Virus record (IMG/VR): IMGVR_UViG_3300028608_000006
Span: 62,001-126,000 of that record
DNA length: 64,000 nucleotides
Reading direction: 5' to 3' (one strand)
Part shown: positions 37,778 through 52,264 of the stretch, piece by piece
Numbering within the stretch: the stretch's first letter is position 1
Layout of the letters: every line of letters begins with the position of its first letter
Made by a program: the position numbers and the translations under genes
The notes under the pieces: model-generated
The model's input: only the letters and a program-made list of their open reading frames with translations
The model's database searches: none
Told to the model about the DNA's origin: nothing

Positions 37778-37854
37778 GCGGTGACTCCTAAGGCGTAGTT
37801 ATCGGCACCAAGGGTTAGTTGGTTACAAGAATGGGATCTTGGTGCCGTACAGGG

Positions 37855-38100
37855 TTATTGTTTAGCAGCTTCCTTTACAGCGCGGACGCTGGCAGGGCGG
37901 GTAACACGGTAAGGGTTCAGTTGGTGTACTGTTCCCTCGTGATCTTTGTAACTGAATTCAAAGACCAAGCAATCATCGGATTGGGGATGAGACTCCGAGA
38001 TAAACTCACCCATAGCGGTAACCATGAGTTGTTGTGTGTACACATCCATGGATGGCGAACCAGCAGTCAGCTGGATTTTTACATGCTTATTTCGCGCCAT
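37855..38100 (-). CDS. Small hypothetical protein
   Basis: 81 aa. Confidence 0.7.
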   Translation of the reverse strand: MARNKHVKIQLTAGSPSMDVYTQQLMVTAMGEFISESHPQSDDCLVFEFSYKDHEGTVHQLNPYRVTRPASVRAVKEAAKQ

Positions 38101-38102
38101 TA

Positions 38103-38849
38103 TTACTTCCTCGGAAGACTGAGAGTGCCTTTGCGTTCTTTCTCACGCGCCTCTACTTCGTCGAGCATGACCAAACGACGGCGAGCCGACTCAATGTTAC
38201 CTTTAACCAACTGCATTTCAAGCTCATCAGTGAGCGATGCGTATAGACGCTCTTGTTCACTGATGATCCTCTCGACGTGCACACGGGTTTCTTCCGTGGT
38301 CATCTTCGGCCGTGCGTTGCCGTAGCCTTGTTGCTCAAGAGCGCGGCGTTCGTCATTGGACGTAAATGCCAGAGGATCTTTACCCGTGTCCAGAATCGGA
38401 CCACCAAATGGAGCGGCTTCAACAGGAGGCATACCGGGACGCTGACCCGGCTCCGACCACTTGGTGTTCTTCCAGTCCTCGCGGATATTGGTAGAAGCCA
38501 TCGAGCGGTTGGCCGACCGAGACTCGTGTGGTAGTTCCAACAACGGGCCACCACGAACATCACCGATAGGAGTAACCGTCAGGCGATCGATCTTGCCCTG
38601 ACTGGTCATTACCATTGCTTCCACTTGCACTGTCTTTGGATGCTTGGCTTTCATCTCCTCGAAGGAAGCGTCCACAGCCTCCTGGAACTCCGGAGTGCTT
38701 TGATCCGCAGCAGCACCCGTCAACTTATCGGCCATCTCGTCCAGCGCATCGTGGGCGGTGTTGTGGTCACACTCGTGGATACGACGGTACAGCAAGATCC
38801 AACGATCCATGGACTGGTACAGGGAGTGTGCTTTCTTGTTGATGTTCAT
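38103..38849 (-). CDS. Hypothetical protein with one W-x14-A motif
   Basis: MDRWILLYRRIHECDHNTAH. Confidence 0.8.
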   Translation of the reverse strand: MNINKKAHSLYQSMDRWILLYRRIHECDHNTAHDALDEMADKLTGAAADQSTPEFQEAVDASFEEMKAKHPKTVQVEAMVMTSQGKIDRLTVTPIGDVRGGPLLELPHESRSANRSMASTNIREDWKNTKWSEPGQRPGMPPVEAAPFGGPILDTGKDPLAFTSNDERRALEQQGYGNARPKMTTEETRVHVERIISEQERLYASLTDELEMQLVKGNIESARRRLVMLDEVEAREKERKGTLSLPRK

Positions 38850-38981
38850 ACCAGGTTTTCCAATTTGACCAGACCAAAATAAACGTACGCGCAGACAATT
38901 GCCAGCGACACCAGTGTTGCGCCACCGAGGATAATAATCGCTCGGCGGAGATCAGCTTTATTAGTTTGCATGACAGATCCT

Positions 38982-39431
38982 TTAGAAACGGTAGACGACT
39001 TTAGTCATCTGCCCTTTGACCGGTACTTGCTCGGGTTGATTGATGTAAGTGCACTGAGTGTACACCGACTTATCTTCAAACCCAGCATCCGAATCCTTAA
39101 CGAGATGGCTTACACCGATGTTCACCATCCCGTTCTCTTGTTGGTAGATGTACAACACCCGATTGTGACTTGCCTGGAAGTAAGTCTTTGCGATACCTTC
39201 TTCCAAGCCGACAGCCTTTGGATTGATCTCCATGTAGGACGAACTGCCGTGCACAATACTCGAACCGCTCATCAAGAAAGCATTGGTGATCGGTTTCATT
39301 TCGATGCGGTCAAAATCTTCCGCACTGTCAACATGCCCATACTCACCACACAAAATACCATTTGGCATGTCATCAGCCACAGCAGACAACGACAACAACG
39401 AAACAACAACACCTACGAACAACTGTTTCAT
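38982..39431 (-). CDS. Secreted/periplasmic protein
   Basis: Signal peptide MKQLFVGVVVSLLSLSAVA-DD. Confidence 0.75.
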   Translation of the reverse strand: MKQLFVGVVVSLLSLSAVADDMPNGILCGEYGHVDSAEDFDRIEMKPITNAFLMSGSSIVHGSSSYMEINPKAVGLEEGIAKTYFQASHNRVLYIYQQENGMVNIGVSHLVKDSDAGFEDKSVYTQCTYINQPEQVPVKGQMTKVVYRF

Positions 39432-39955
39432 GCGGCTACTCCTTTAACCAGATCATTCATCGAAATGCCGTCGATATCACGCAGGTGGTCGGCAAATGTT
39501 TTACGCAGCTCACCCAACTTCTGTTTGAAGGAGTTGTGTTCACCAGCGCGGTTGAAGTCCCAACGGATTTCGAAGTCATGCAGACCTTCGCCGAAGATTT
39601 GAAGAATCAACGTATCTTTCCGGATGGAAGCGTGGAAGAACATTGGTTTCTCTTGAAGCAAGACATGACTGAACAGCGAAGGCTTCTTCGAGTCTGCCCA
39701 ACGCTCGATCTCTTCCAACACACCGATTTGCTCATACAGCTCATCACGGTACAGATCCAATTGCTTGGAGAAGTGCGCGATGTCCTGGGTGTGCGGAATG
39801 TCAATGCGGTTAGTCCACTTGCCATGCTTGCCGAAATCGAATTCGGTACTGAAGCGCAGATCCCCCAAACGGTTACGATGAGCTTCAGACAGGATCACAA
39901 CGTTACGGTTAAGGAACGCTTGACCCAGATTACGTTTGCTAAAGATTACAGCCAT
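39428..39955 (-). CDS. Hypothetical protein, first gene after an early promoter
   Basis: 175 aa, GGAG RBS. Confidence 0.8.
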   Translation of the reverse strand: MAVIFSKRNLGQAFLNRNVVILSEAHRNRLGDLRFSTEFDFGKHGKWTNRIDIPHTQDIAHFSKQLDLYRDELYEQIGVLEEIERWADSKKPSLFSHVLLQEKPMFFHASIRKDTLILQIFGEGLHDFEIRWDFNRAGEHNSFKQKLGELRKTFADHLRDIDGISMNDLVKGVAA

Positions 39956-40028
39956 TGCGGTATTGCTCCTAATAGTTCGAGTGCAGTTCTTTGCACCCGG
40001 TAAAAAGTTTGTGTTACATTACAGGTGG

Positions 40029-40060
40029 GTAATATAGGCTTGAAACCAACTGTAAGTTAA
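40029..40060 (-). promoter_or_regulatory. phiKZ-type early promoter
   Basis: Minus strand TTAACTTACA-n5-TTTCAAGCCTATATTAC. Confidence 0.8.
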
Positions 40061-40500
40061 ACGGGTTCGGTCATGCCAATCGAGATCGGAATAAACCCCA
40101 GCGATTGGTAGAACTTGAAGGACCCCTCATTGCCGTAGATGCTGTTTACCTTTAATGGTCCTTTGACCATGCTCTTCAGCTCGGTAAACAATCGACGACC
40201 AATCCCTCTTCTGCGGAACTCTGCGGACACAAAGAACTCCGAGATCGACTCCGGGTCATCCACAGAGGTAGCAATGAACCCTACAGACAAATCATTGACC
40301 TTCGCCAACACCAACATGTCAATCGACAAGAAGGCCTTGGTAGTCAGGTCTTCCATTACATCGGGTGCGATCACCATGCGTTCTTTAATGAACTGATAAT
40401 CGTAGTTCATCAGCTCGTGGTACATTCCAAACAAATCCATCAAGTAGATATTGGTTGGATCCACATTAGCTAACTTAACGTAACGTACTTCTTGAGACAT
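40057..40500 (-). CDS. GNAT-family acetyltransferase
   Basis: FFVSAEFRRRGIGRRL (motif A) and SFKFYQSLGF (motif B); AAGGA RBS before ATG 40500. Confidence 0.85.
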   Translation of the reverse strand: MSQEVRYVKLANVDPTNIYLMDLFGMYHELMNYDYQFIKERMVIAPDVMEDLTTKAFLSIDMLVLAKVNDLSVGFIATSVDDPESISEFFVSAEFRRRGIGRRLFTELKSMVKGPLKVNSIYGNEGSFKFYQSLGFIPISIGMTEPV

Positions 40501-40571
40501 CGAAAAATCCTTAATCGAAGTTAACCGAACGGTGGTAACAAATGCACAGCGAGGTAAAAATAAAGCCGTAC

Positions 40572-40603
40572 CCAACCACAGAACCCGAAGGCCCTGTGGT
40601 TGG
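40572..40603 (-). terminator. 10-bp hairpin
   Basis: CCAACCACAG...CTGTGGTTGG. Confidence 0.6.
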
Positions 40604-40617
40604 TTTGGCGTGGGTTG

Positions 40618-41079
40618 TTACTTGTCAGCTACACAGTCGGCTACAGTGACGAGACCCTTCACAGGACCTACACCATCTTTAGCGTGTGGTGAATCCGGAT
40701 TGTCGAACACGTAGACGATGAAGTAGGGTTTACCGCTACCGTCTTCCTGCTTGAGCAACAGCGTGGTTGGATCGCCAGCCATGACGTCGACCTGGCTGAG
40801 TTGGTTGTTGGTCAGGATGTGACGCTCAGGGAACGCCCGTCCTTTATTAAGGATGAAACCGTCCTTGGTCTGGATGACCGTGGTCTTGGCTTCAACTACC
40901 GGGTTGTCAGTGACGGCCTTCTTGTTCACCATGGTGTTGCTGGTGAACTTGCCACAGCTGAACGTGATGTCGTTCGAACTACGGATGACCGGGTTGGGTT
41001 TGTTTTCAACAATCGGTTTGTTAGAAGCGTGAGCGACGAAAGTCAGTGCCAACAGTGCAAGGATACTAAGTGCTTTCAT
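40618..41079 (-). CDS. Secreted/periplasmic protein
   Basis: Signal peptide MKALSILALLALTFVAHA-S; two Cys. Confidence 0.78.
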   Translation of the reverse strand: MKALSILALLALTFVAHASNKPIVENKPNPVIRSSNDITFSCGKFTSNTMVNKKAVTDNPVVEAKTTVIQTKDGFILNKGRAFPERHILTNNQLSQVDVMAGDPTTLLLKQEDGSGKPYFIVYVFDNPDSPHAKDGVGPVKGLVTVADCVADK

Positions 41080-41108
41080 GTCGTGTTACTCCGTTAACTG
41101 GTTGTGGA

Positions 41109-41528
41109 TTACTTGTTGTTTTTCTTGAGTTGCTTTTTCATCTGCTTCCGCCAGCCTTTAACCATGGCCTTGGAAACCATGTTGAAACTGTCCGACGCCA
41201 AGTCAGCGAAATGACGCTCAACTTTGCGGAATGGACCCTGCAACGCCAGTCGCATAAGGAACTGCGGACTGATCATAACCACGCTAGCCACACCACGCAC
41301 TTCAGACTCACCCATGTTGCGGATAGGCTTTAGGCGGGCCTCGTTCATCTCCTGACGAGCAGCGGACACCGGGAGATTAGGGATTACGGACGGAGTAAGC
41401 GAGATCGCCACATCCGAACGAGGTGGATCCATTGGATATTTCTTCCAGACGTCTTGCTGCTCCTTAGGAACGGGTTTCGCCAGCTCCTCGGCAATGCGTT
41501 TATCAGCGTAACTGGTGTCACGTTTCAT
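41109..41528 (-). CDS. Hypothetical protein, first gene after an early promoter
   Basis: AAGGA RBS before ATG 41528. Confidence 0.75.
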   Translation of the reverse strand: MKRDTSYADKRIAEELAKPVPKEQQDVWKKYPMDPPRSDVAISLTPSVIPNLPVSAARQEMNEARLKPIRNMGESEVRGVASVVMISPQFLMRLALQGPFRKVERHFADLASDSFNMVSKAMVKGWRKQMKKQLKKNNK

Positions 41529-41574
41529 AATCAAGTCCTTGTGTAACAGTTTAATTGCTTTGCTTACTGTCTTG

Positions 41575-41606
41575 GTAATGTAGACTTGAAGCAGACTGTA
41601 AGTTAA
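41575..41606 (-). promoter_or_regulatory. phiKZ-type early promoter
   Basis: Minus strand TTAACTTACA-n5-CTTCAAGTCTACATTAC. Confidence 0.75.
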
Positions 41607-41735
41607 TTACTTAGCTTTCGCTATTCCGCCCACACCGTTGTAGGCAGCCAACATCAAACCGCCGGCAGAACAACCACCGATAACCAAGATCACCGCAATG
41701 ATCAAACCACGAAACAGATTGGAACGCTTAGCCAT
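41607..41735 (-). CDS. 42-aa membrane peptide, possible lipoprotein
   Basis: Read manually: MAKRSNLFRGLIIAVILVIGGCSAGG...; lipobox-like IGG-C. Confidence 0.55.
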   Translation of the reverse strand: MAKRSNLFRGLIIAVILVIGGCSAGGLMLAAYNGVGGIAKAK

Positions 41736-42177
41736 TACTTTTGCTCTTGAACCATTGGTCTAAAGTTTTAGGACGACGCTCCGGCATGTAACCGATAGCA
41801 CCCATGTGGAAACCAAACCGCCCAATCGGTTTAATACGCGACTGGTTGCAGATCTCACGAAAGCGGTCAATACAGATAGGACGTGGGCTTAACTCCCCGG
41901 CCATCAACTTCTTGAGCGCGGCCTTTAGAACATCCTCGGCCAGACGCACGCGATTAGTTCCGTCTACTGTCGGGTAACCCATCCCAACGAATCCAGGTCC
42001 CCGTTGGTAAATAGATAACATCACCTGCTTCTCAGAGTAGTCCGAGTAGATGGTCAGTCCGCCGTCAGGAGTTGTGTGGATCTTGACTTCATGCCCGTCT
42101 AACAGTACAACCTTTTCAACGCCGTCAAACAATTCGTTGATAATCAACAAGCGAAATAGCTTGCGTAGCCTTTCCAT
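41728..42177 (-). CDS. Hypothetical protein
   Basis: 149 aa, AGGAG RBS. Confidence 0.75.
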   Translation of the reverse strand: MERLRKLFRLLIINELFDGVEKVVLLDGHEVKIHTTPDGGLTIYSDYSEKQVMLSIYQRGPGFVGMGYPTVDGTNRVRLAEDVLKAALKKLMAGELSPRPICIDRFREICNQSRIKPIGRFGFHMGAIGYMPERRPKTLDQWFKSKSNG

Positions 42178-42195
42178 AAAACGCTCCTACTAAAA

Positions 42196-42219
42196 CGCCT
42201 CCCCGGCTAGGAGGAGGCG
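42196..42219 (-). terminator. 7-bp hairpin
   Basis: CGCCTCC...GGAGGCG. Confidence 0.6.
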
Positions 42220-42225
42220 CTATCG

Positions 42226-42822
42226 TTACTGTTGCTTGCCGAACTTGATCACTTCCTGCTTGCCGGTGTCGAACGCGAGTTGCGTCTTGGCGTCAGAGAC
42301 CACTTGGCAGGATTTCACGATGTCAGCTTTGGGGAACCCGGCGAACGATAGGAGCATGCCGCGCCACAAATAACCGCGCATGTTTTCGTACGTGCCACAG
42401 GCTTCCAGTTTTCGCGATTGGGCAATTTGGAATTCTTTCCGGCCGCCTTCGATCACGTCTTGTATTTTCAGATACAGTTTGCTGTCAAGAGTGGGATTCT
42501 GTTCTTTGATCCACTGCATGGCCGCCTGACTGCCATTGGGTCCGTAACGCCCCTCGAAGGTCGCCTTGAGCGTATCCTTCAAATCACCCGCATACATCTG
42601 GGTGACGCCGGCGGTTTCCTGGATGGTCAAGGTGACCGTGCTTAGGACGTTTTCGGAGTCCTTGTTGAGCTTGTTGATGGTGGTCTCAGCCTGAATGGCC
42701 GAGTCATGCGCGCTGGTGTAAGTTCCCACTACCACAGCGCCGATCAAAACAATGCCTACCAGCAACACACCCAAAATACAAGCCACCAGCATACCGGTGG
42801 ACATTTTCTTCGTAGCAGTCAT
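42226..42822 (-). CDS. LemA-like membrane-anchored helical protein
   Basis: N-terminal TM, then a helical bundle (EGRYG...WIKEQNP...IEGGRKEF...YE...GF), in LemA-like order. Confidence 0.6.
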   Translation of the reverse strand: MTATKKMSTGMLVACILGVLLVGIVLIGAVVVGTYTSAHDSAIQAETTINKLNKDSENVLSTVTLTIQETAGVTQMYAGDLKDTLKATFEGRYGPNGSQAAMQWIKEQNPTLDSKLYLKIQDVIEGGRKEFQIAQSRKLEACGTYENMRGYLWRGMLLSFAGFPKADIVKSCQVVSDAKTQLAFDTGKQEVIKFGKQQ

Positions 42823-43928
42823 GCTCTTGCTTTCCTTACGTAGAAAACTTCTTCCTTAATGAAGAAGTAAGAGAGGCCAGCCGTCGCCGTGAGGTTCAGG
42901 AGGACCAGTAGTACAACCCACCAGGTTGGTGGATCGATCGCTTGCATCATGTAAGCGAATTCTTCGTTCGGCACACGGTTGAAATCTTTCATGATCAAAG
43001 CATATTGCTCTTTAACCACGTCGATACCAAACTCACGCTCGTACGTTGCCGATTGCAGTTGCTTCAGGAGGATCTGGTTGTTCTGACCGTCGGCGAAGGA
43101 CATTGCTTTCGCCCACTTGATCTGCTCGTTCTCATCAACACCGTACAACAAGATGATGTCGTTCTTCCGAGCCCCACGCCAGTACTCCATGAGTGCATAG
43201 AAATAGTCAGGGTCGTTTTTCGTTACGACCAAGATTATGTTCATCTGCTTCAACGCCGAATCTTTACGCAGCTTATTGTTAAGCCAGATATTGATCCCGT
43301 CGTAATCCTGCTTCGTGTCGTCGAGCACACGATAGTAGTTGTAGTAGTCGTACGGCATCGGGTAAGCCGGTAACGTCCCCGCATACTTAGCGGAGATAGT
43401 AGCATCCGTCTTGAACCGATCATCATCGACCAAGAGGTAGTTACGCACCGATTCCGTTTCCGATACAGGATCCCCTACTTCCACATCGCTCCAGCGCGGC
43501 GGCTCGCTCAATCCACGACGATCTATTCGGTCGATCGTGTGCAGCGTACCCAACGAGGTCCGCACGTCCCAGTCGACGTCATAGGAGTGCTCGTGACACC
43601 ATTTAGGGGAGCAAGACCGTGAGGTATGTGCTTTACCCTTGGAGTCGTAGGTAGTAGAAGAGGTACAGGTCTCGCCACACTGATACGAGTGGCTACACGA
43701 AACCTCGTCCCGCTCCTTCTTGACCACAAAGCCGTTGAGAATATCGAAGTCGTGAGTCTTCATCATCCCCGACAGCGCTAGCAACCCCATGCACAGAGCT
43801 GTCGAAAGAACCAATGCCCCTATTTGAGACACCCACTCTTTCCAGCAGATCTTGTGGTTCCAGAAGAACTTGCAAAACGTGATGAGGATGATGGAAGGCA
43901 CGGCCATTAAAGCGAGGTAGAATCCCAT
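42819..43928 (-). CDS. Membrane protein with a Cys-rich loop and a TPM-like domain; partner of the LemA-like gene
   Basis: Two N-terminal TMs, CSHSYQC...C...C...WCHEH segment, alpha/beta domain, C-terminal TM; coupled to the LemA-like ORF. Confidence 0.6.
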   Translation of the reverse strand: MGFYLALMAVPSIILITFCKFFWNHKICWKEWVSQIGALVLSTALCMGLLALSGMMKTHDFDILNGFVVKKERDEVSCSHSYQCGETCTSSTTYDSKGKAHTSRSCSPKWCHEHSYDVDWDVRTSLGTLHTIDRIDRRGLSEPPRWSDVEVGDPVSETESVRNYLLVDDDRFKTDATISAKYAGTLPAYPMPYDYYNYYRVLDDTKQDYDGINIWLNNKLRKDSALKQMNIILVVTKNDPDYFYALMEYWRGARKNDIILLYGVDENEQIKWAKAMSFADGQNNQILLKQLQSATYEREFGIDVVKEQYALIMKDFNRVPNEEFAYMMQAIDPPTWWVVLLVLLNLTATAGLSYFFIKEEVFYVRKARA

Positions 43929-43982
43929 TCCGTTATTCCTGGTCCTGTGAAAGACCCCAGCCGAAACTAGGGTCTGGTTGGG

Positions 43983-44606
43983 TTACGCGTTGAAGGTGGC
44001 TTCTTCGGCTCGGAGCAGTTGCTCGACACCCATAGCGTGTGCTTCCACCAGAGGAACGTCATGACGGAAGTGGCAGTCGATGACCCACTCCAGCGACGGC
44101 GTACCTTCCACGATAGAACCGATGTCCGGGACTTCTTGGTCCAGATCGTAGTCTTCCGCCTTCAGGTTGTTGATGGCGTGAACCACGAAGGTGAACAGCG
44201 GCGTCAGGTAGATCTCGCTGATGCCTTCACGGTCAGCAAACGACATACCCCACTGACGAACACCCACCGCGCTACCCGACGTAGCGAAGAGCGATGGATC
44301 ACCCTTGACGATACGTTCACGGTAATCGCCGTCACGGATTTCACGGAACAACTTGGTGGCCTTGAGGTATGCCTGGATATCGGCTTTCAAGTCCATCAGT
44401 TGGGTCCGTGCTTCTTCCGTCACGTCAGGTTTCTCAGTCGCCAGTGCAAACACACGCAGCATGACTTCCAGACCTTCGTTAGCCGCGGCGATGGCTTCGG
44501 CGGGAGTGCAGCCGACTTTGACTTCGTACTCGGCCAGCCAGCGCAGCGAAACTGCTTTGGTATGAGTGTCGAAGATTGGAGCGGTACGTTCTTGTTTATT
44601 AACCAT
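43983..44606 (-). CDS. Hypothetical protein with two W-x14-A motifs
   Basis: SLRWLAEYEVKVGCTPAEAI and SLEWVIDCHFRHDVPLVEAH. Confidence 0.8.
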   Translation of the reverse strand: MVNKQERTAPIFDTHTKAVSLRWLAEYEVKVGCTPAEAIAAANEGLEVMLRVFALATEKPDVTEEARTQLMDLKADIQAYLKATKLFREIRDGDYRERIVKGDPSLFATSGSAVGVRQWGMSFADREGISEIYLTPLFTFVVHAINNLKAEDYDLDQEVPDIGSIVEGTPSLEWVIDCHFRHDVPLVEAHAMGVEQLLRAEEATFNA

Positions 44607-45120: not shown

Positions 45121-45126
45121 ACTGCT

Positions 45127-45444
45127 TTACACCCGAGTTCTTTCGACGTGGTAAATGTAGATCTCGACGTCTTCCCGACCATCGATGTTTTGGTTGGGTG
45201 CGCAGACCGGTTCTTTATTCAGCCAATCAGCTTCGGCGAACTCTTCCTGGACCAAACGTCTAGCAGCATGAGCCACAGCAGAAGTCGGACCAGTAACCCA
45301 CGGTTTGATACCCTCGTACTTCTCGAGGTACCAGTCAATCCATTCCCGGGTAATAAAACGCCGAGGAGCGCCAAGACCACAATCAGCGCCAGGCAGGATA
45401 CGACTGAAGTTCGGTTCAGGAACATCTTCTTCTTTCGTATCCAT
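45127..45444 (-). CDS. Hypothetical protein, related to 45448-46053
   Basis: RRFITREWIDW...AHAARRL. Confidence 0.7.
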   Translation of the reverse strand: MDTKEEDVPEPNFSRILPGADCGLGAPRRFITREWIDWYLEKYEGIKPWVTGPTSAVAHAARRLVQEEFAEADWLNKEPVCAPNQNIDGREDVEIYIYHVERTRV

Positions 45445-45447
45445 TTC

Positions 45448-46053
45448 TTATACCCGGTGGGAGATTTGACGTTCAATGATGATTTCGTAAGGGAAGTACA
45501 TCACGCCCTTGCGCTCTTGTGGAGCAGGACCGATGTTCACCCACATCGAAATCCCCTTCTTGCTTTCAGGGGTTGGGAACAACCGCCTGACTGTAGCGTG
45601 ACCCGCTTGATCGATAACACGGTCCTTGTTGCTGTCGGGGTTTACTTTCATGAACCATTCGACCCAGTCCATGTTTACGAACCGACGATCATCAACAGCG
45701 CTGAACGGAGCGGGCTCGATGCCGAACTCAGGATGGCTACTCGGAAGTAGATGCATCATGTTCTCTTCATGGTCCTTGAAGACTTGAAGGCAAGCCTTGA
45801 CACGACTGGCAGGAAACTCATGCATCCCCAACCCAGATTCAAATGCCCGTAGACGCTCATGCAGCCAACGAAGACGCTCGGGGGTTGCACGCAAGATCTC
45901 AACGAGCCGGTCTGGGAGATCAGGATGCTTATCGACCTCGTGATCGATGAACGATTGGATGCTGTTACCGAGACCGCAATCGTGGATATCACCCAGTGGC
46001 AGGTCTTTACGCATTTGTTCTTTTTCAGCTTCGAAGTCAGTGCGAACGCTCAT
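45448..46053 (-). CDS. Hypothetical protein, related to 45127-45444
   Basis: RRFVNMDWVEW...GHATVRRL. Confidence 0.75.
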   Translation of the reverse strand: MSVRTDFEAEKEQMRKDLPLGDIHDCGLGNSIQSFIDHEVDKHPDLPDRLVEILRATPERLRWLHERLRAFESGLGMHEFPASRVKACLQVFKDHEENMMHLLPSSHPEFGIEPAPFSAVDDRRFVNMDWVEWFMKVNPDSNKDRVIDQAGHATVRRLFPTPESKKGISMWVNIGPAPQERKGVMYFPYEIIIERQISHRV

Positions 46054-46083
46054 GGTTGTAATCCTTACAAGGTTATAATTGAG

Positions 46084-46821
46084 TTAAGCGTGGTGTACGG
46101 TGACGGCGGTGCCAGCGAGGTGGGCTTCGTACCAGGATACTTGTTCGGTGTACTTGTAATGCAGCACCCAGTTCATGCTCAGCACCGTACGGTTAATCCC
46201 GGCGCTCTTGAACTCCGGATCGCTGATGAACTTCTCCGGATAGATATTCCGGTGTATAACCCGCGGAAGTTCGCGCTCCAGACCCCGCATGATCTCGCAA
46301 GCCACTTCATGCGCCTGCACAATACCGATGCCGAACTTCTTGGAGTGCCACAACAACCACTCGGTACTTGGTTGGGTGTCGCTTTGATTGCCGAAGATAC
46401 TCGGTTCGTCAGGAGAAGGTTCATACCGCACGGTATTCGCCACCTCTTTCAGCTCGTCGAGGTTACGCTTGAGTTGACCCAAACGCATTTCAACAATCTG
46501 TGCCACTTCACCAGCAGCCTTGACGATGTCGATGCCACGTGCTTTAGCGAGATGGGCAACGAACTCGCGGTTGATTTCAACACTGTTACCGAGGAACAGA
46601 CCTGGTTCATTGCCGAAACCGGATTGTTCGGCTTTAGCCGCCAGCCAAGCAAACCGCTCCATAATCGTTTGGATGGTGGTTTTATCTTCAGGGGTTTGTT
46701 CTTTAACGCGATCCAGCAGTTTGGCCATCTGATCGATAACCGTGGCATCAGCCCACACTGCAATGAAAAGATCTTTACGCGTTTTGCGTGCTACTGATTC
46801 TGGCGAAATGATTTGGACCAT
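46084..46821 (-). CDS. Hypothetical protein with three W/F-x14-A motifs
   Basis: NREFVAHLAKARGIDIVKAA, STEWLLWHSKKFGIGIVQAH, SMNWVLHYKYTEQVSWYEAH. Confidence 0.8.
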   Translation of the reverse strand: MVQIISPESVARKTRKDLFIAVWADATVIDQMAKLLDRVKEQTPEDKTTIQTIMERFAWLAAKAEQSGFGNEPGLFLGNSVEINREFVAHLAKARGIDIVKAAGEVAQIVEMRLGQLKRNLDELKEVANTVRYEPSPDEPSIFGNQSDTQPSTEWLLWHSKKFGIGIVQAHEVACEIMRGLERELPRVIHRNIYPEKFISDPEFKSAGINRTVLSMNWVLHYKYTEQVSWYEAHLAGTAVTVHHA

Positions 46822-47464
46822 GGTTCAATTCCTTAGAAAATTCACGTTCTTGACGAAGCTGGTTAATACGTCTGGCCGCTTCGTATACTTTAAGTGGGAA
46901 CTTGGTTTCATCGAACCAACCCCCAATGTAGATCTCAAGACAACGGTTACTTCGCACAGCCTCTTTAAAGACCATGTGAATCCCGTTATCCACTCTGAAA
47001 CTGATCAGCATTTTCCCCATGCCAATCAGCGTCTTCACCGTGTCCCCGATTACAACATTTGTTAAGCTACTGATGGAGGCACGGTATTTCAGCCGTTCGG
47101 AGATAACCGCGTGCAGCTCACGGACTACTCCCAACGAATGAAGCTTATCCCAATGTACTTCTCTTTCAACCCGCTTAACACTGAGGAAGGTCCCCTCGTA
47201 TTCTGGGGTCCGACTAACAATGCTAAACTCCCCTACCCCTAGGCGCAAACGTGGTCCCTTCTCCCAGGTAAACTCTGAGAGTGCTAACACAGGGTTGTCC
47301 TTGTGCTTATGTTTCAGCACACGGTCCGCGTAAGCTTTAAAGAAAGGAGCGATCCCACATCCCTCGTTAAGCGAGTTAACAACATAAGGATGGAGTCGCC
47401 CTAAAGTTTCATGCAAAACCTTCACTTGACGAACATTGCTTATTGGTGCAATTTTTCCGGTCAT
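46775..47464 (-). CDS. Hypothetical protein
   Basis: 229 aa. Confidence 0.75.
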   Translation of the reverse strand: MTGKIAPISNVRQVKVLHETLGRLHPYVVNSLNEGCGIAPFFKAYADRVLKHKHKDNPVLALSEFTWEKGPRLRLGVGEFSIVSRTPEYEGTFLSVKRVEREVHWDKLHSLGVVRELHAVISERLKYRASISSLTNVVIGDTVKTLIGMGKMLISFRVDNGIHMVFKEAVRSNRCLEIYIGGWFDETKFPLKVYEAARRINQLRQEREFSKELNHGPNHFARISSTQNA

Positions 47465-47477
47465 TCTAATCTACTAC

Positions 47478-47609
47478 TCAATACCACACTTTTGGGGCCA
47501 TCACGATAAAGACAGTTAAGAAGATCCCAACCACTGCTACCGCGACTATGCAGAAACCAGAGAGCTTATCCAAACAGCTCTCCCATCCTTTCCGGCCGTT
47601 CTTGTCCAT
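47478..47609 (-). CDS. 43-aa membrane peptide
   Basis: Read manually: MDKNGRKGWESCLDKLSGFCIVAVAVVGIFLTVFIVMAPKVWY; GAGGAG RBS. Confidence 0.65.
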   Translation of the reverse strand: MDKNGRKGWESCLDKLSGFCIVAVAVVGIFLTVFIVMAPKVWY

Positions 47610-47649
47610 GAGTGCTCCTCATCGAACTATAGAAAGTTCGGTGTGATGT

Positions 47650-48006
47650 TTAGCCCAGTGATTCACGTTCTTTTTCGGCCTGTTCTTTCGAGGTCTCGTC
47701 AAGAGTGATAGTAAGTTGGCCACACTTACCGCACTTGGTTTCTTTAACCACGTCAAACCCGTAGGACGAAATGAGAAGCGCACGGCCTTCTGCCAGGACT
47801 TGTGTAGTGATACATTGTCCCCTGCCTGGCAGTTTGACCTTACGCAGTTCGTGCATGACCGTCGTACCGAAGTTAGCCAGCGCGTAATCGTCGAAGAGCT
47901 CTTCTAAGGCCGCTTGAACGTTCTCCTTGGGCAACCCCTCAAAGAACACACCCAAGCGCTTACCGACCTCCTCAGCCACCTCATAATCGAATCGAGGCTG
48001 GTCCAT
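47650..48006 (-). CDS. Hypothetical protein
   Basis: 118 aa; coupled to the upstream gene. Confidence 0.75.
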   Translation of the reverse strand: MDQPRFDYEVAEEVGKRLGVFFEGLPKENVQAALEELFDDYALANFGTTVMHELRKVKLPGRGQCITTQVLAEGRALLISSYGFDVVKETKCGKCGQLTITLDETSKEQAEKERESLG

Positions 48007-48338
48007 CAGGCGATCATCGCTTTAAGCACGTTGGCGAAACGAATGAGGTCGTTCTCGTTGAAGAGTTCTTCCTCCATGTAGTCGGCGAGCATTTCGCCAT
48101 CAAGCTCACGGACGCTGACCAAGGCGCGGCTGGTTGAGCCTTCCTTGTTTACTTCGTTAATGGTAACCACGCCAGCGAGTGGAGCAAAGCACAGCGCAAA
48201 CCGGCTGAACTCTTCACGGTTGGCATCGGTGAACATGCTGACCCGGATGTGACGCTTGTCTGGGAGAGCAAACAAGGTCTTCAGTTCAGGGAACCACAGA
48301 CCGCCGGCCATCAAAGGTTTTCTGTTGATATTTCTCAT
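48006..48338 (-). CDS. Hypothetical protein duplicating the C-terminal domain of 48335-49063
   Basis: IRVSMFTD...FAP...ELDGE...F...DLIR versus VRVRAFVD...IAP...VLDGE...F...DLFR. Confidence 0.75.
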   Translation of the reverse strand: MRNINRKPLMAGGLWFPELKTLFALPDKRHIRVSMFTDANREEFSRFALCFAPLAGVVTINEVNKEGSTSRALVSVRELDGEMLADYMEEELFNENDLIRFANVLKAMIA

Positions 48339-49063
48339 CTGGCTTTATACCCAATAGAGGAAGAGAATGTTGTCATGACACGAAAGAGATCGTGCATACC
48401 GAAGTGTTCTTGGTTAACAAACTTAACCAAGGCCTCACCATCGAGAACTTGGAGCGTTGCTACCGGTGTTGCGATACGACCGTTGTCACCCACTCGTTTG
48501 TCAATGCGAATGACATTACTGCGCGGGGCAATGAGAAGCTGGAAGTCGTAGAACTTACCCCAGTCGCTGTCGACAAAGGCGCGAACACGAACATCCTCGG
48601 TGACTTCCAACCAACCCTTCCAGTTTGCCAAGTACCACGGTTGGTCGAATACCAGTTCGCCGTCCAGCGCCTTGAGTTCGTTTACTTCACCCATCACTTC
48701 ATCAGGCGTCTTGGCGAACTGTCGGCATTTGTGGATCAGCCACGCCAACGAAACATTCCGGGTGCCTTCCACAAACATTGCCGGAGCATCTAGCGGGAGA
48801 AGATGGGGTTCATCGATTCGCAGTTGACTAAGAATAAGCTTTCGAACCTTGTCCTGCTTTTCGAAGTGGTTGCTCGAGAAGTCGACAAACGGAACCAGAG
48901 ACCTTACCAAGATTCCTGGGTTCTTCTCTTTCTGCTCGGCGTAGTGCGCGTTGCTTCTTTGTTTCTTATCCCAGTTTGCCCACGCTTGGCTGAAAGGACG
49001 CTCTGCACCGGTAAACGGAGAAGGTTCATCGGCAGCCGGGATATACTCTTTTACTTCACTCAC
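48335..49063 (-). CDS. Hypothetical protein with a W-motif and a duplicated C-domain
   Basis: SLAWLIHKCRQFAKTPDEVM. Confidence 0.8.
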   Translation of the reverse strand: MSEVKEYIPAADEPSPFTGAERPFSQAWANWDKKQRSNAHYAEQKEKNPGILVRSLVPFVDFSSNHFEKQDKVRKLILSQLRIDEPHLLPLDAPAMFVEGTRNVSLAWLIHKCRQFAKTPDEVMGEVNELKALDGELVFDQPWYLANWKGWLEVTEDVRVRAFVDSDWGKFYDFQLLIAPRSNVIRIDKRVGDNGRIATPVATLQVLDGEALVKFVNQEHFGMHDLFRVMTTFSSSIGYKAR

Positions 49064-49066
49064 TGC

Positions 49067-49900
49067 TTATTCCTCTTCAGCAAACCAAGGGTCATCGGGA
49101 TTGAGAACCTTATCGTGGTATTTGATTTTAACCTTGCACGGGTCAGTGGGCTCCCAAGGTAGGATCTCTACGTTACCTCGCATCTTGCCATCGAACTCAC
49201 TGTCGATCATGGACTTAGCCCCAATCTCCCACGCCTGTTTAGGGGTGAGGTTATGAACCCCGCTACACCACATCACCCAACCCATGGACAACTTGCGTAT
49301 ATGGGCAGGATCCAGTAGATCGGGTTCTGCGCCATAAGTCCGTGTGTCAGTAGTAGCGCCGACGTTATCAACTACCAATTGCGGTTTGAGTTTGGCTTCG
49401 AGATAGTCTTGCAACTCCTCGGGAGTTTTATCCCGCATGAGCTTCAGGACCTCGTAGTTGTTCACACCCAAAAGGCTTGGTGTATGGGGACGCACTCGAT
49501 TACCGCGAAGATCGAACCCCGGCTCTGGTCCTATCGCGGTTGGCTTGGTTCTGCCGTAAAAGGCATCACGAACAGAATCGACAATCTTCTCGACATCCTC
49601 CGCGTGCGGATCTTGGCGGAGGATCTTAGATGGGTCTTGAAGCGGTTGGATAGGGTGCCAAGGGTTTTGAGTAACCTGCCCGATACTTGCATTGGGGTCG
49701 GTGTAGAAACCCAACTGGGCGGCCCTACGACATGCCGAGTGACCCACATCCTTTTCCCTAGGACCCTGACCCATGAAACCTGGATTAGGTTGTTTCACTT
49801 GAACATCCAGGAACTCGGCTACTTCTTTGCTTACGATCTGACAACCCGGACGCTCCAGCTTAAGGAAGATCCGGAGTTTACGAAAGGCTTGTCTTAACAT
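49067..49900 (-). CDS. Hypothetical protein with one W-x14-A motif
   Basis: SMGWVMWCSGVHNLTPKQAW. Confidence 0.75.
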   Translation of the reverse strand: MLRQAFRKLRIFLKLERPGCQIVSKEVAEFLDVQVKQPNPGFMGQGPREKDVGHSACRRAAQLGFYTDPNASIGQVTQNPWHPIQPLQDPSKILRQDPHAEDVEKIVDSVRDAFYGRTKPTAIGPEPGFDLRGNRVRPHTPSLLGVNNYEVLKLMRDKTPEELQDYLEAKLKPQLVVDNVGATTDTRTYGAEPDLLDPAHIRKLSMGWVMWCSGVHNLTPKQAWEIGAKSMIDSEFDGKMRGNVEILPWEPTDPCKVKIKYHDKVLNPDDPWFAEEE

Positions 49901-50265
49901 GGCTTGGTCCTTAAAGGTATAAAGCTGTTCTTGATATGTTCTTCAAGCTCAGAGGTGGGATCGAATGTAAACGCAATGTCCTGAGCCCCGAGGCTCCCCA
50001 TTGGCGCGCTAAGGCACTTGGGAAGATTACCGAAGTTGATGGTGTACGTTTCGTCTAACGGACTTTTAAGATCCCCCACTGCCGCGACGATATCAGCAGG
50101 GTCGTGACGGAGTACATCGCCCCACGACTTTAGCCAGCGATGTAGCGGGCTGTTAGTGTGGTCGATTTCTTCAAACGTCATCTTGATATCTGGTCGTCGC
50201 TCAATACGACGGATACCACCGCACGGCATTACTTCTGTACGCGGAACAATCTTACCTGCCATCAA
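49894..50265 (-). CDS. Hypothetical protein, first gene after an early promoter
   Basis: 123 aa, GGGAG RBS. Confidence 0.7.
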   Translation of the reverse strand: MMAGKIVPRTEVMPCGGIRRIERRPDIKMTFEEIDHTNSPLHRWLKSWGDVLRHDPADIVAAVGDLKSPLDETYTINFGNLPKCLSAPMGSLGAQDIAFTFDPTSELEEHIKNSFIPLRTKPC

Positions 50266-50302
50266 ACTGTTCTCCCATTAAAAGAATTGGATTTACACCT
50301 AA

Positions 50303-50319
50303 GTAATGTAGGTTTGAGT
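50303..50319 (-). promoter_or_regulatory. phiKZ-type early promoter
   Basis: Minus strand ACTCAAACCTACATTAC. Confidence 0.75.
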
Positions 50320-50348
50320 TATTGTAAAAATCAATTTATCAAACATAA

Positions 50349-50379
50349 CCCTGCTCCGCCCTTTCGGCACGGAGCAGGG
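50349..50379 (-). terminator. 10-bp hairpin
   Basis: CCCTGCTCCG...CGGAGCAGGG. Confidence 0.7.
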
Positions 50380-50387
50380 GTAGTCGT

Positions 50388-51581
50388 TTACTTGCTTTGT
50401 TTCAGCTCGGGGCATTGGTCGCCGAGAGCGTAGGCGATGTTGCCGACAGCAGAGCTCGTGATGTTGAGGAAGGTAAGGATGCCGGATGTGGCGTTCAGAC
50501 TGCAACTGAGATCAAACAGATCGTCTTCCAGTTCGTCGTGCTTCTTCTCATCCTGGTTCTTGGTAAGCTCACTCCTCAGCTTGTCCATCTTGCCTTTCAC
50601 ATCAGTGTGGATCTCCTTGATCTTCTTCTTGCTGCCCTCGGCCTGATCAAGGGCGCGCTTACTGTCTGCGAGCCAGGACTTACACGCACTGATACTTTTA
50701 AAGTGCTCAGGACGCGAACCGTTAGCAAAGCCTTCAAGGGCCTCGATAACGGCACCAGTTCTGGTGGACATCTCTTTGTAGATGTTTCTAGCGCGTTCAC
50801 TGAACGACTTATCGTCAGCACTTTCTTCGAAAGACTCTTTGCGGGTCTTGATGGTGGCGAGGGCCTTTTCGATGCTTTCGCAGTTTCTTTTGATGTTGTT
50901 GGCGTTGATCACGGAGAATTCGAACACCTCCTTAACCAACTCAGCAACCTGAGGCACAGCTTTTGCAACTTCGGCCGGGGTTGGCTTACTGGCTTCAGCA
51001 GGCTTGGAATCAGGCGCCTTGGAGTTGTTGTCAGACCCGCTCTTGGACGGCTCGGACTTGGCAGGTTCAGCCTTGGTGATCTTGAGATCTTCCTTGACAT
51101 CCGCAACCTTCTTTTCCAGCTTGGTCTTTTCAGGACCGGCCGGGAGCTTTTCAACCTTGGCTTCAACAGCCTTCACGGTAGCCACAACGTTATCCGGTGT
51201 AACCTTTGGAGCGTCCATCGCCTTTACCGCGACTTCAGCCTCGGCAACAGTCGCCTTGATCTTTGCGTCCTTTTCGGCAGCCGGTTTACCGAAGAGGAAT
51301 TCCCAGAGAGATTTGAACATCTTCTGAATGTATTCCCACATCTTCGCGATGCCTTTACCGATGGCGCTAAACAGGCCACCTTCTTCGTTACCGGTAATCT
51401 CGTCGAGACCAGATTCCAGGCCAGCAGCATACATGACACCGTGCAAGTAATGCTGCGCTGCGGAGAGGTTCATACCTTCACTACCGCTAACGGTATCCAT
51501 GAAGCCTGCCATTACTTTCTCGACATGTTCCGGAGCCGGAATGTCGTCGTAATCATCGGCGAAGTCAACAATGTGATTCAT
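50388..51581 (-). CDS. Probable virion inner-head/ejection-type protein; paralog of 3771-4826
   Basis: EHVEKVMAGFMDTVSGSEGMNLSAAQ...GNEEGGLFSAIGKGIAKMWEYIQKMF closely matches 3771. Confidence 0.65.
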   Translation of the reverse strand: MNHIVDFADDYDDIPAPEHVEKVMAGFMDTVSGSEGMNLSAAQHYLHGVMYAAGLESGLDEITGNEEGGLFSAIGKGIAKMWEYIQKMFKSLWEFLFGKPAAEKDAKIKATVAEAEVAVKAMDAPKVTPDNVVATVKAVEAKVEKLPAGPEKTKLEKKVADVKEDLKITKAEPAKSEPSKSGSDNNSKAPDSKPAEASKPTPAEVAKAVPQVAELVKEVFEFSVINANNIKRNCESIEKALATIKTRKESFEESADDKSFSERARNIYKEMSTRTGAVIEALEGFANGSRPEHFKSISACKSWLADSKRALDQAEGSKKKIKEIHTDVKGKMDKLRSELTKNQDEKKHDELEDDLFDLSCSLNATSGILTFLNITSSAVGNIAYALGDQCPELKQSK

Positions 51582-51661
51582 ACATCCCCCAGTGGGCTTA
51601 GTGTTATAAGGTGTCTATAGCATATGGTTTCTGGGAGAAGCAAAAAAATAAAGGTAAGTAA

Positions 51662-51687
51662 CCAACGGAGGCCGAAACCCCCGTTGG
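51662..51687 (-). terminator. Hairpin
   Basis: CCAACGG...CCGTTGG with a displaced U-tract on the minus strand. Confidence 0.55.
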
Positions 51688-51695
51688 CTCACTAC

Positions 51696-52214
51696 TTATT
51701 GATGGAAAGGAATTACGGTTGCGGTACACCCTGTATCTCCGTCGCGGCTAACTTCCAGAAAATCGTATCGACCCGGTATAGACTGGGGACCGAACAAGTT
51801 ACTGTAGCCCATTGTGTATGCCACTTGAAAACTCACGTTGTACCGGTGCCGGTAGTCCATTACAAATGCCATGGATACCAATGCTTCGTCCTCCAACGAA
51901 ACGGCGGGCGGTACTGTGTCGAAATCAATGTGACGTTGCGGTTCAGCGGTAAGATGAGCGTGTAAGGTAGTGCCGATGCTCATGGCCATTTGATGATTCA
52001 GGCCATACTTCATCATAAACCAGCGCACCCAACGAGGATGCACTCCTCCACCCCGAGTAAACAAGCTAGGTTCTGTAGGGTCAGGTTTATACTCCGACTT
52101 ATCTGTGATTTGAAGCATCGCAGCTATCGGATGTATATTCATGAACAATGGCATTGCCAAAGAACGCATTGCCCCTACGAGCCCAATTTTTGCGGAAGTA
52201 GCTTTATTAATCAC
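51696..52214 (-). CDS. Hypothetical protein with two W/F-x14-A motifs
   Basis: HPRWVRWFMMKYGLNHQMAM and SMAFVMDYRHRYNVSFQVAY. Confidence 0.8.
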   Translation of the reverse strand: MINKATSAKIGLVGAMRSLAMPLFMNIHPIAAMLQITDKSEYKPDPTEPSLFTRGGGVHPRWVRWFMMKYGLNHQMAMSIGTTLHAHLTAEPQRHIDFDTVPPAVSLEDEALVSMAFVMDYRHRYNVSFQVAYTMGYSNLFGPQSIPGRYDFLEVSRDGDTGCTATVIPFHQ

Positions 52215-52264
52215 AAGCTTTACCTCACATTTATTTTATCGTTGAATTGGTTTTCAGAAACGTC

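What the first reader, a model, noticed from the sequence alone, without database searches (positions are those of the whole stretch)
38103..52214. An apparently undescribed 20-residue W-x14-A module repeated about 12 times across eight early proteins
Seen, with exact spacing: MDRWILLYRRIHECDHNTAH (38103); SLRWLAEYEVKVGCTPAEAI and SLEWVIDCHFRHDVPLVEAH (43983); NREFVAHLAKARGIDIVKAA, STEWLLWHSKKFGIGIVQAH and SMNWVLHYKYTEQVSWYEAH (46084); SLAWLIHKCRQFAKTPDEVM (48335); SMGWVMWCSGVHNLTPKQAW (49067); HPRWVRWFMMKYGLNHQMAM and SMAFVMDYRHRYNVSFQVAY (51696). Looser copies occur in 45127 and 45448. Consensus: S-x-x-W-h-x-x-aromatic-x3-(Y/H/F)-x-h-(S/T)-x3-A-(H/Y/W), often followed by x-h-G. The host proteins are otherwise dissimilar, so the module is shuffled. 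Inference: a helix-turn-helix-like interaction or localisation tag shared by a network of early proteins, for example binding DNA, the phage nucleus shell, or a common partner.
Basis: seen in the sequence. Interest (0 to 1): 0.78.

Follow-up and report, generated by a model that had tools for sequence, protein, structure and literature searches.

The report
New repeated domain, jumbo-phage early genes
A soil jumbo phage related to Pseudomonas phage EL has seven neighbouring genes, in operons headed by early-type promoter motifs, built from an undescribed tryptophan-rich module of about 45 residues; two modules are predicted to pack into a compact domain with no detectable structural relative, and its function is unknown.

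Summary
All ten quoted strings exist, all on the minus strand.

- **Significance:** a module profile built only from proteins outside the window scores seven window proteins at 10.5-91.4 bits. The best of 18,200 shuffled ORFs reaches 9.4 bits. No other ORF and no antisense ORF scores.
- **Count:** about 12 supported copies in seven proteins. 38103 is borderline (HMM fails; profile-profile 68%).
- **True extent:** the module is longer than 20 residues. It has an extended E-P-S-[IL]-F arm, a W-V-x-W-Y helix, a G-h-S turn and an E-A-H-x-x-G helix.
- **Domain:** two modules form one ~110-residue domain by internal duplication (hhalign 96.9%). AlphaFold models it confidently (pLDDT 91, pTM 0.84).
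- **No relatives:** nothing significant in PDB, AlphaFold DB clusters or ESM Atlas (BFVD tried with the full-length model only), and no Pfam, PHROGs or PDB sequence match.
- **Distribution:** 62 unnamed relatives; ten were looked up and five sit on 214-237 kb contigs. Also phage EL gp133 and an unannotated ORF in phage PaBG.
- **Setting:** EL-type early promoter motifs head both operons, and an Acb1 homologue lies just upstream.
- **Interpretation:** the proteins are diverged paralogs, not unrelated hosts of a shuffled tag. They are acidic, which argues against DNA binding.

Most likely these are a protein-binding scaffold family for host takeover or counter-defence. That function is inferred, not shown.

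The parts
46084..46821 (-). Gene, 245 aa, three modules. Residues 130-245 (46087-46434) are the two-module domain that was modelled.
   Evidence: HMM 91.4 bits; hhalign 98.4, 96.8 and 94.4%; AF2 pLDDT 82 for the full protein and 90.9 for the domain; dN/dS 0.14-0.25
46492..46608 (-). 46084 module 1 (Phe in place of the first Trp)
46288..46416 (-). 46084 module 2 (D-E-P-S-I-F arm, W-L-L-W helix)
46102..46221 (-). 46084 module 3
51696..52214 (-). Gene, 172 aa, two modules (51960-52082 and 51795-51908). Its residues 38-145 are homologous to the two-module domain of 46084.
   Evidence: BLASTP E 4e-7 to 46084; HMM 78.6 bits; hhalign 98.2 and 96.6%; contig from an RNA library over 51719-51999 and beyond
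43983..44606 (-). Gene, about 207 aa; the true start is probably the ATG at 44606, not the TTG at 44684. Modules at 44472-44582 and 44016-44132, plus a possible degenerate central copy at 44193-44300.
   Evidence: HMM 57.2 bits; hhalign 97.6 and 94.2%, central copy p 0.0075 only; ortholog gene calls of 207-208 aa
49067..49900 (-). Gene, 277 aa, one module at 49208-49327, followed by a conserved C-terminal tail
   Evidence: HMM 25.9 bits; hhalign 97.0%; leave-one-out E 2.6e-6
48335..49063 (-). Gene, 242 aa. The C-terminal half is paralogous to the neighbouring gene 48006-48338.
   Evidence: HMM 13.3 bits; hhalign 88.7 and 78.8%; linked through P0041, P0050 and P0058; C-terminal paralogy E 4e-8
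45448..46053 (-). Gene, 201 aa, one module at 45604-45717 whose second helix is divergent
   Evidence: HMM 19.9 bits; hhalign 91.1%; consistently the top non-training hit
45127..45444 (-). Gene, 105 aa, one partial module (45265-45387). Absent from related loci L001 and L004.
   Evidence: HMM 10.5 bits; hhalign 80.9%; no ortholog found
38103..38849 (-). Gene, 248 aa. Borderline N-terminal helix-turn-helix half (38730-38810) without the arm.
   Evidence: HMM 5.3 bits, within shuffle noise; leave-one-out rank 44; hhalign 68%, p 4.8e-5, against controls at p 0.018 or worse
50303..50318 (-). EL-type early promoter motif, 38-53 nt upstream of gene 49894-50265. It heads the tightly packed gene block running down to 43983.
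   Evidence: 8 sites in the window against 0.29 expected; agrees with the published EL promoter consensus (PMC7058600)
54322..54337 (-). EL-type early promoter motif upstream of gene 52998-54245. It heads the block that ends with 51696.
51660..51689 (-). Terminator-like hairpin with a 13-bp stem, directly after gene 51696

Best explanation
What it is. This is a previously undescribed protein domain family of jumbo phages. The repeating unit is about 45 residues. It has an extended proline-rich arm (Y-x-P-x3-E-P-S-[IL]-F), then helix A carrying W-V-x-W-Y-x2-[KR]-[HY], a three-residue G-h-S turn, and helix B carrying E-A-H-x2-G.

How it folds. Two such units arose by internal duplication. They are predicted to pack into one compact, pseudo-symmetric domain of about 110 residues.

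How it spread. Gene duplication expanded the domain into at least seven adjacent genes in two operons, each headed by an early-type promoter motif, just downstream of an Acb1 homologue.

What it most likely does (inferred). The invariant positions are core residues (Trp, Pro, Leu, Val, Tyr, Ala). The rest varies, and the proteins are acidic. I therefore read the domain as a stable scaffold that presents variable surfaces, so that each paralog binds a different protein early in infection, for host takeover or counter-defence. Members with a single module would have to pair with themselves or with another paralog to complete the fold.

Confidence by step: real new domain family built from an internal repeat, about 0.9; expressed early, about 0.6; protein-binding early effectors, about 0.4; pairing of single-module members, about 0.3. 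The overall figure of 0.45 is for the statement as a whole, function included.
For: - Significance of the repeat.
- Extended consensus, with P and A nearly invariant.
- Alignment of 33 sequences from three subfamilies over the whole two-module unit. E, P and two W are invariant; Y, P, S, L, P and V are nearly invariant.
- The two halves are homologous, hhalign 96.9%, E 1.7e-10.
- AF2 model of the unit, pLDDT 90.9 and pTM 0.84, with the arm residues at pLDDT above 90.
- 62 true relatives among 1.84 billion representative proteins, most with two copies. Ten were looked up: none has an informative name, and five lie on contigs of 214-237 kb.
- Syntenic islands in related phages hold 2 to 7 module genes, all on the coding strand.
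- EL gp133 has two modules and sits in the same island behind an annotated phage promoter.
- Purifying selection, dN/dS 0.11-0.25.
- Acidic proteins with a negatively charged helix B.
- Early promoter motif.
- Acb1 (PF23474, E 1.2e-12) about 2.2 kb upstream.
- Contigs from a soil RNA library cover parts of 51696 and 48335.
Against: - No partner, localisation or phenotype is known for any member.
- The function rests on composition, the conservation pattern and the neighbourhood only.
- Neighbourhood to Acb1 is weak evidence in a genome where most genes are unannotated.
- dN/dS shows no positive selection. The high divergence comes with very high dS, so it reflects mosaic exchange rather than a demonstrated arms race.
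- Early timing is inferred from a promoter motif that was predicted for EL. It was not measured in this phage.
- The RNA-library contigs could be DNA carry-over.
- The fold is a prediction from 33 sequences.
Confidence: 0.45

Rival explanations
1. The modules are divergent DNA- or RNA-binding helix-turn-helix units. Two or three are tethered per protein, as in POU or double-homeodomain proteins, and the proteins are early regulators or nucleoid-remodelling factors.
For: - Helix, 3-residue turn, helix geometry, with Gly/Asn at the turn and a small residue (Ala) at the helix crossing.
- The weak, non-significant fold hits are enriched for DNA-binding proteins: POU, DUX4, MatP, Mor, AvtR, sigma-70 region 4, HMG boxes, IHF/HU.
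Against: - No HTH Pfam model matches.
- pI 4.8-6.7, and the would-be recognition helix has a mean charge of -0.9.
- The conserved residues are hydrophobic, not the polar or basic residues expected for base contacts.
Confidence: 0.15
2. The domain is a localisation or assembly element. It docks early proteins onto a shared phage structure (nucleus shell, import machinery, early infection vesicle) or onto each other, which is the reader's 'network tag' idea.
For: - The phage is related to EL, whose record carries a nuclear shell protein and a PhuZ tubulin.
- The conserved face of helix A and the arm are the same in all paralogs, so they could contact one common partner.
- Single-module members need a partner to complete the predicted fold (inference).
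Against: - In the model the conserved residues form the interior of a self-contained two-module domain, not an exposed peptide.
- The module also occurs in phage PaBG, which is classified outside Elvirus.
- No localisation data exist for any member.
Confidence: 0.12
3. The proteins are small-molecule or nucleotide-signal sponges, or otherwise direct inhibitors of one defence pathway, and so form a new anti-defence family beside Acb1.
For: - Small, acidic and aromatic-rich, with a likely oligomerising architecture.
- They sit directly downstream of an Acb1 homologue in the window, and in L001, L007, L008 and EL.
- Gene content of the island varies between close relatives.
Against: - No similarity to known sponge families was seen in any sequence or fold search.
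- No conserved polar pocket residues.
- Association by position only.
Confidence: 0.1
4. The similarity is chance or a compositional effect of amphipathic helices.
For: Single copies score low on their own. 38103 is within noise by HMM.
Against: - Seven proteins score above the best of 18,200 shuffled ORFs.
- Cross-validation recovers left-out proteins.
- 62 relatives were found in an exhaustive search.
- No antisense ORF scores.
Confidence: 0.01

Closest known systems
Pseudomonas phage EL gp133 (YP_418166.1, 'hypothetical protein', 89 aa) and its copies in eight other Elvirus records
   Same: It has two modules (HMM E 1e-4 among 601 ORFs). It lies in the same island between the ligase/RNase H/2H-phosphoesterase genes and the acetyltransferase, behind an annotated phage promoter. 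It was also a weak top fold hit in BFVD.
   Different: EL has a single minimal gene (gp092 is a doubtful second) where this phage has seven. It is uncharacterised, with no PHROGs or Pfam family.
Unannotated ORF of Pseudomonas phage PaBG (NC_022096, 10737-11087, 117 aa)
   Same: One clear C-terminal module, tblastn E 3e-3 to 4e-4 and HMM E 3e-9.
   Different: A different phage genus (Baikalvirus), a single copy, and no gene called in the record.
Tethered helix-turn-helix DNA-binding domains (POU, double homeodomain, Mor, MatP)
   Same: Helix-turn-helix units repeated in tandem within one small protein. These proteins dominate the weak fold hits.
   Different: No significant sequence or structure match. 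The proteins are acidic, helix B is negatively charged, and an N-terminal proline-rich arm is integral to the fold.
HU/IHF alpha1-alpha2 body and HU-CCDC81 domains
   Different: Scores are at noise level, and no beta arms of the HU type are present.
Lineage-specific expansions of small domains in jumbo phages, for example about 35 zinc-ribbon copies in Bacillus phage G (PMC7824862)
   Same: A small domain multiplied within one jumbo-phage lineage, function unknown.
   Different: No metal-binding residues, a different predicted fold, and members clustered in one island under early-type promoter motifs.

Membership tests
Any described Pfam family or repeat | A match to a Pfam-A model at or near its gathering score | tested here: not met
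   Eight window proteins, 22 isolated modules, ten distant relatives, EL gp133, the PaBG ORF and the modelled domain were scanned. Nothing scored better than E 0.007, and every hit was below its cut-off.
Any PHROGs family | A match to a PHROG profile | tested here: not met
   No hit for the window proteins, the distant relatives, EL gp133 or the PaBG ORF.
DNA-binding helix-turn-helix superfamily | Significant structural match to a tri-helical or winged HTH domain | tested here: not met
DNA-binding helix-turn-helix superfamily | A basic or polar recognition helix and an overall basic domain | tested here: not met
   pI 4.8-6.7. Helix B mean net charge -0.9, module mean -0.8.
DNA-binding helix-turn-helix superfamily | Binds DNA | not testable with these tools
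   Needs gel-shift or footprinting experiments.
Beta-clamp-binding peptide (QL[SD]LF type), considered for E-P-S-[IL]-F | Gln at position 1, and location in a flexible, exposed segment | tested here: not met
   Position 1 is Glu and position 2 is Pro in every aligned copy that has the arm. In the model the segment has pLDDT above 90 and forms bridges with the rest of the domain.
Early operon of an EL-like phage (virion RNA polymerase promoter) | The conserved AT-rich early promoter motif upstream of the operon, in the gene's orientation | tested here: met
   Sites at 50303-50318 and 54322-54337 on the minus strand. Eight sites in the window against 0.29 expected. The motif agrees with the EL consensus in PMC7058600 Table 2.
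Early operon of an EL-like phage (virion RNA polymerase promoter) | Transcripts appear early in infection | not testable with these tools
   Only steady-state soil RNA-library contigs are available.
Anti-defence gene island | A known anti-defence gene adjacent in several related genomes | tested here: met
   Acb1 (PF23474) in the ORF 54414-55004 (E 1.2e-12). It also precedes the module genes in L001, L007 and L008.
Anti-defence gene island | The module proteins themselves inhibit a defence system | not tested
   Requires expression in strains that carry defence systems.

The most novel reading that the evidence does not exclude
The half-module is a self-complementary pairing element with a new fold. 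Paralogs with one, two or three modules pair within and between proteins by exchanging arms. This would give a combinatorial set of early complexes that neutralise host defence or takeover targets, and so a new anti-defence or host-takeover family of nucleus-forming jumbo phages, sitting beside Acb1.
Probability: 0.2. Interest if true: 0.8.

Novelty: categorically new. Interest (0 to 1): 0.6.

Why it matters
Most genes of jumbo phages have no family, fold or function.

This finding groups seven window genes, 62 metagenomic proteins, EL gp133 and an unannotated PaBG gene into one family. The family has a defined repeat and a confident model. The model has no detectable structural relative, so it may be a new fold.

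Three features mark the family as a candidate for host takeover or counter-defence:
- the genes lie in operons headed by early-type promoter motifs;
- an Acb1 homologue lies immediately upstream;
- copy number varies between close relatives.

EL gp133 offers a tractable entry point, because EL and its host Pseudomonas aeruginosa can be cultured.

If the function turns out to be ordinary, the result still supplies a new domain definition for annotation databases.

Tried and rejected
- **Nearest DNA relatives.** Megablast of the region against phage genomes found nothing. tblastn of 46084 and of P0012 also found nothing.
- **ESM Atlas feature search.** Scores of 0.5-0.6 for P0018 and 46084 are uninformative.
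- **Whole-protein fold search.** The long N-terminal helices dominated and only noise came back. I therefore modelled the two-module unit alone.
- **Other candidate copies seen by eye or by BLAST.** These were ORF 27481-27726 (BLAST E 6e-4 to the C-terminus of 43983) and 49894-50265. Neither is supported by HMM or by profile-profile comparison (1.3% and 0.2%).
- **False positives of the exhaustive search.** Three hits are low-complexity repeats: P0006, P0056 and P0064.
- **Clamp-binding-motif idea for E-P-S-I-F.** Rejected; see the membership test.
- **Positive selection as the cause of fast divergence.** Rejected: dN/dS is 0.11-0.25 and dS is very uneven along the region.
- **Fusion partners with known domains.** P0048 (618 aa), L008:14719-15702 and L006:2718-3365 have no Pfam or PHROGs hit.
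- **Literature searches.** Searches for EL gp133, chimallivirus early gene families and nucleus import signals found nothing about this motif.
- **A failed run.** My first hhalign batch returned a stale file. I repeated it correctly.


Full report
**Context.** The window comes from a jumbo phage distantly related to Pseudomonas phage EL. Its GroEL-like chaperonin is 44% identical to EL gp146, and its tail fibre and NAD-ligase have EL-like PHROG matches. There is no close DNA relative among 50,697 phage records. Near-identical DNA occurs in soil, rhizosphere, wetland and digester metagenomes. All genes of the finding lie on the minus strand.

I tested significance in four ways.

1. Leave-one-protein-out HMMs were searched against all 455 six-frame ORFs of the window. 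The left-out proteins 46084, 51696, 43983 and 49067 each came back at rank 1, with E from 6e-8 to 2e-4. The never-trained 45448 and 45127 were repeatedly the next best.
2. A profile rebuilt only from proteins outside the window scored 46084 at 91.4 bits, 51696 at 78.6, 43983 at 57.2, 49067 at 25.9, 45448 at 19.9, 48335 at 13.3 and 45127 at 10.5. The next real ORF reached 6.2 bits, and the best of 18,200 shuffled ORFs reached 9.4.
3. No antisense ORF scored, in the window or in six related loci.
4. Profile-profile comparison gave 78.8-98.4% for these copies. Nine neighbouring non-module proteins, taken as controls, gave at most 2.6%.

Gene 38103 fails the HMM tests (5.3 bits; leave-one-out rank 44). 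Its ortholog profile does match the helix-turn-helix part at 68% (p 5e-5), so I call it borderline. The count is therefore about 12 supported copies in seven proteins:

| Gene | Copies |
|---|---|
| 46084 | 3 |
| 51696 | 2 |
| 43983 | 2, plus a doubtful central copy |
| 48335 | 2, one of them new |
| 49067 | 1 |
| 45448 | 1 |
| 45127 | 1 |

**What the module really is.** Aligning the copies with their flanks shows a nearly invariant Pro, within an E-P-x-h-F stretch, 10-14 residues before the Trp. With 103 copies from relatives, the consensus reads as follows:
- E-P-S-[LI]-F, then about seven variable residues;
- [LPV]-[SN]-x-x-W-V-x-W-Y-x-x-[KR]-[HY]-G-[VL]-S-x-x-E-A-H-x-x-G.

The unit is about 36-45 residues, not 20.

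**Relatives.** An exhaustive HMMER search of 1.84 billion representative proteins with 22 module copies gave 65 hits at E up to 1e-3. Three are low-complexity artefacts. The other 62 are mostly small proteins of 60-270 residues (one, P0048, has 618), and most have two copies. I looked up ten of them. None has an informative name ('hypothetical protein' at best), and five lie on contigs of 214-237 kb, the size of jumbo-phage genomes. None of the ten scanned has a Pfam or PHROGs family.

Five related loci were fetched (L001, L004, L006, L007, L008). L001, L007 and L008 show the window's order of ligase or RNase H, then Acb1, then the module genes. The loci hold between 2 and 7 module genes within 20 kb.

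Among cultured phages, EL gp133 (89 aa) carries two copies in the same island. It is conserved in nine Elvirus records. An unannotated 117-residue ORF of phage PaBG carries one copy.

**Paralogs, not shuffling.** 46084 (126-237) and 51696 (35-136) align over 112 residues (E 4e-7). Thirty-three sequences from three subfamilies align over the whole two-module unit. E, P and two W are invariant; Y, P, S, L, P and V are nearly so. The first and second halves of that unit are homologous to each other (hhalign 96.9%, E 1.7e-10), so the unit arose by internal duplication. 48335 is tied to the family through intermediate sequences. Its C-terminal half is a separate domain shared with the neighbouring gene 48006-48338. 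The seven proteins are therefore diverged paralogs with extra segments added. They are not unrelated proteins that acquired a tag.

**Structure.** AlphaFold2 on full-length 46084 (15 sequences) gave pLDDT 82 and pTM 0.57. Each module appears as an extended segment, an 11-residue helix, a three-residue turn and a second helix. The two-module unit alone (33 sequences) gave pLDDT 90.9 and pTM 0.84. The arm residues are modelled at pLDDT above 90, with isolated beta bridges in the first module and short strands in the second.

Fold searches found nothing significant:

| Search | Best result |
|---|---|
| Foldseek vs PDB | E 0.5 (full), 1.6 (domain) |
| AlphaFold DB clusters | E 0.1, 0.9 |
| BFVD (full-length model only) | E 0.2; top rows include EL gp133 and a RisingSun protein |
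| ESM Atlas | TM 0.42 |

**Are these real, expressed genes?** dN/dS against orthologs is 0.11-0.25, which indicates purifying selection. The low amino-acid identity of several module genes (33-71%, against 80-99% for neighbours) goes with very high and uneven dS. It therefore reflects mosaic exchange of diverged alleles rather than positive selection. Strain-level contigs replace 49062-49658 and other segments outright.

A 16-nt motif occurs eight times in the window against 0.29 expected. Seven of the eight sites are on the minus strand, and at least five of them lie in intergenic gaps. The motif agrees with the early promoter consensus predicted for EL (PMC7058600, Table 2), and such motifs define the promoters used by the virion RNA polymerase in these phages (PMC7598289). 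Sites at 54322-54337 and 50303-50318 head the two gene blocks that contain the module genes. Sigma-70-like promoters are depleted (7 against 15.8 expected), and strong hairpins close the blocks. A soil RNA library holds contigs over 51719-51999 and beyond, and small ones inside 48335. DNA carry-over cannot be excluded. 'Early' is thus a reasonable inference, not a measurement.

**Function.** Nothing is shown directly. Three observations argue against sequence-specific DNA binding:
- the proteins are acidic (pI 4.8-6.7; 70% of relatives are below pI 7);
- helix B, which would be the recognition helix of an HTH, has a mean charge of -0.9;
- the conserved positions are hydrophobic or proline.

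The conserved arm is modelled with high confidence and contributes beta bridges, which suggests it is part of the fold rather than a free peptide motif. The family looks like a stable scaffold with variable surfaces. It has multiplied in an island under early-type promoter motifs that begins with an Acb1 homologue (PF23474, E 1.2e-12), and the gene content of that island differs between close relatives: 45127 is missing from L001 and L004, and 45448 is missing from L004.

My best reading, at roughly 0.4 probability, is a set of protein-binding early effectors for host takeover or counter-defence. Single-module members probably pair to complete the fold. The rivals are nucleic-acid binding (0.15), a docking or localisation element (0.12) and a ligand sponge (0.1).

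**Novelty.** No described sequence family or structure matches. The only cultured-phage members are an uncharacterised EL protein and an unannotated PaBG ORF. I rate the domain as new in kind. Two cautions apply: the fold is predicted, and the function is unknown.

Noticed in passing
window 5889-5904, 30426-30441, 34145-34160, 40029-40044, 41575-41590, 50303-50318, 54322-54337 (all minus strand); 63020-63035 (plus strand, 2 mismatches): A 16-nt motif, TTCARGYCTAYATWAC, occurs 8 times against 0.29 expected. Most sites lie in intergenic gaps upstream of minus-strand genes. It matches the predicted EL early promoter, and one site precedes the GroEL-like gene.
   Followed up: partly
window 54414-55004 (minus strand; the true start is probably near 54845): Homologue of the anti-CBASS phosphodiesterase Acb1 (PF23474, E 1.2e-12), about 2.2 kb upstream of the first module gene. 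The same gene order is seen in L001, L007 and L008, and EL has a 2H-phosphoesterase-like gp126 at this position.
   Followed up: partly
L005:5794-6147 (NC_022096 10737-11087, minus strand): Phage PaBG has a 117-codon ORF with one clear module in a gap between gp017 and gp018 where no gene is annotated.
   Followed up: yes
window 48335-48590 and 48006-48338 (minus strand): The C-terminal 80 residues of 48335 are paralogous to the adjacent small gene 48006-48338 (30% identity, E 4e-8). This is a second, unrelated duplicated domain in the island.
   Followed up: partly
window 41728-42177; L001:14328-15131: The L001 ortholog is 267 aa and matches the 149-aa window protein twice (70% and 44% identity). 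It is a tandem internal duplication in the related phage.
   Followed up: no
window 42226-49900: Synonymous divergence to the close relative L004 varies more than ten-fold between neighbouring genes (dS 0.09 for 42226-42822 against 1.47 for 46084-46821). This indicates recombinational mosaicism.
   Followed up: partly
window 47465-47593, 49062-49658, 49485-49660, 49912-50195: Contigs from other metagenomes replace or delete these segments. The C-terminal, module-bearing half of 49067 is swapped for 482 unrelated bases in one strain, and 174 bases are replaced by 39 in another.
   Followed up: no
window 45127-45444 and 45448-46053: 45127 has no ortholog in L001 or L004, and 45448 has none in L004. 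45127 resembles part of 45448 (E 0.016) and may be a recent partial duplicate.
   Followed up: partly
window 37000-56900: Sigma-70-like promoter matches are depleted (7 against 15.8 expected). Strong hairpins sit at 52962-52989 and 51660-51689 (minus strand) and at 54378-54407.
   Followed up: no
window 44566-45750 (+), 45859-46797 (+), 50397-51620 (+), 53001-54254 (+): Long ORFs of 300-417 codons run antisense to the real genes. A longest-ORF gene caller picks them in place of the true genes, and none carries the module.
   Followed up: yes
window 43983-44684: The mechanical ORF starts at a TTG 26 codons upstream of the likely true ATG at 44606. Ortholog gene calls are 207-208 aa.
   Followed up: partly
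L010:853-1659 (EL gp092, phrog_31119): A weak candidate for a second module-bearing protein in EL (E 0.047): an E-P-S-V-F stretch followed by two W-x2-Y-Y or W-x2-W-Y helices.
   Followed up: no
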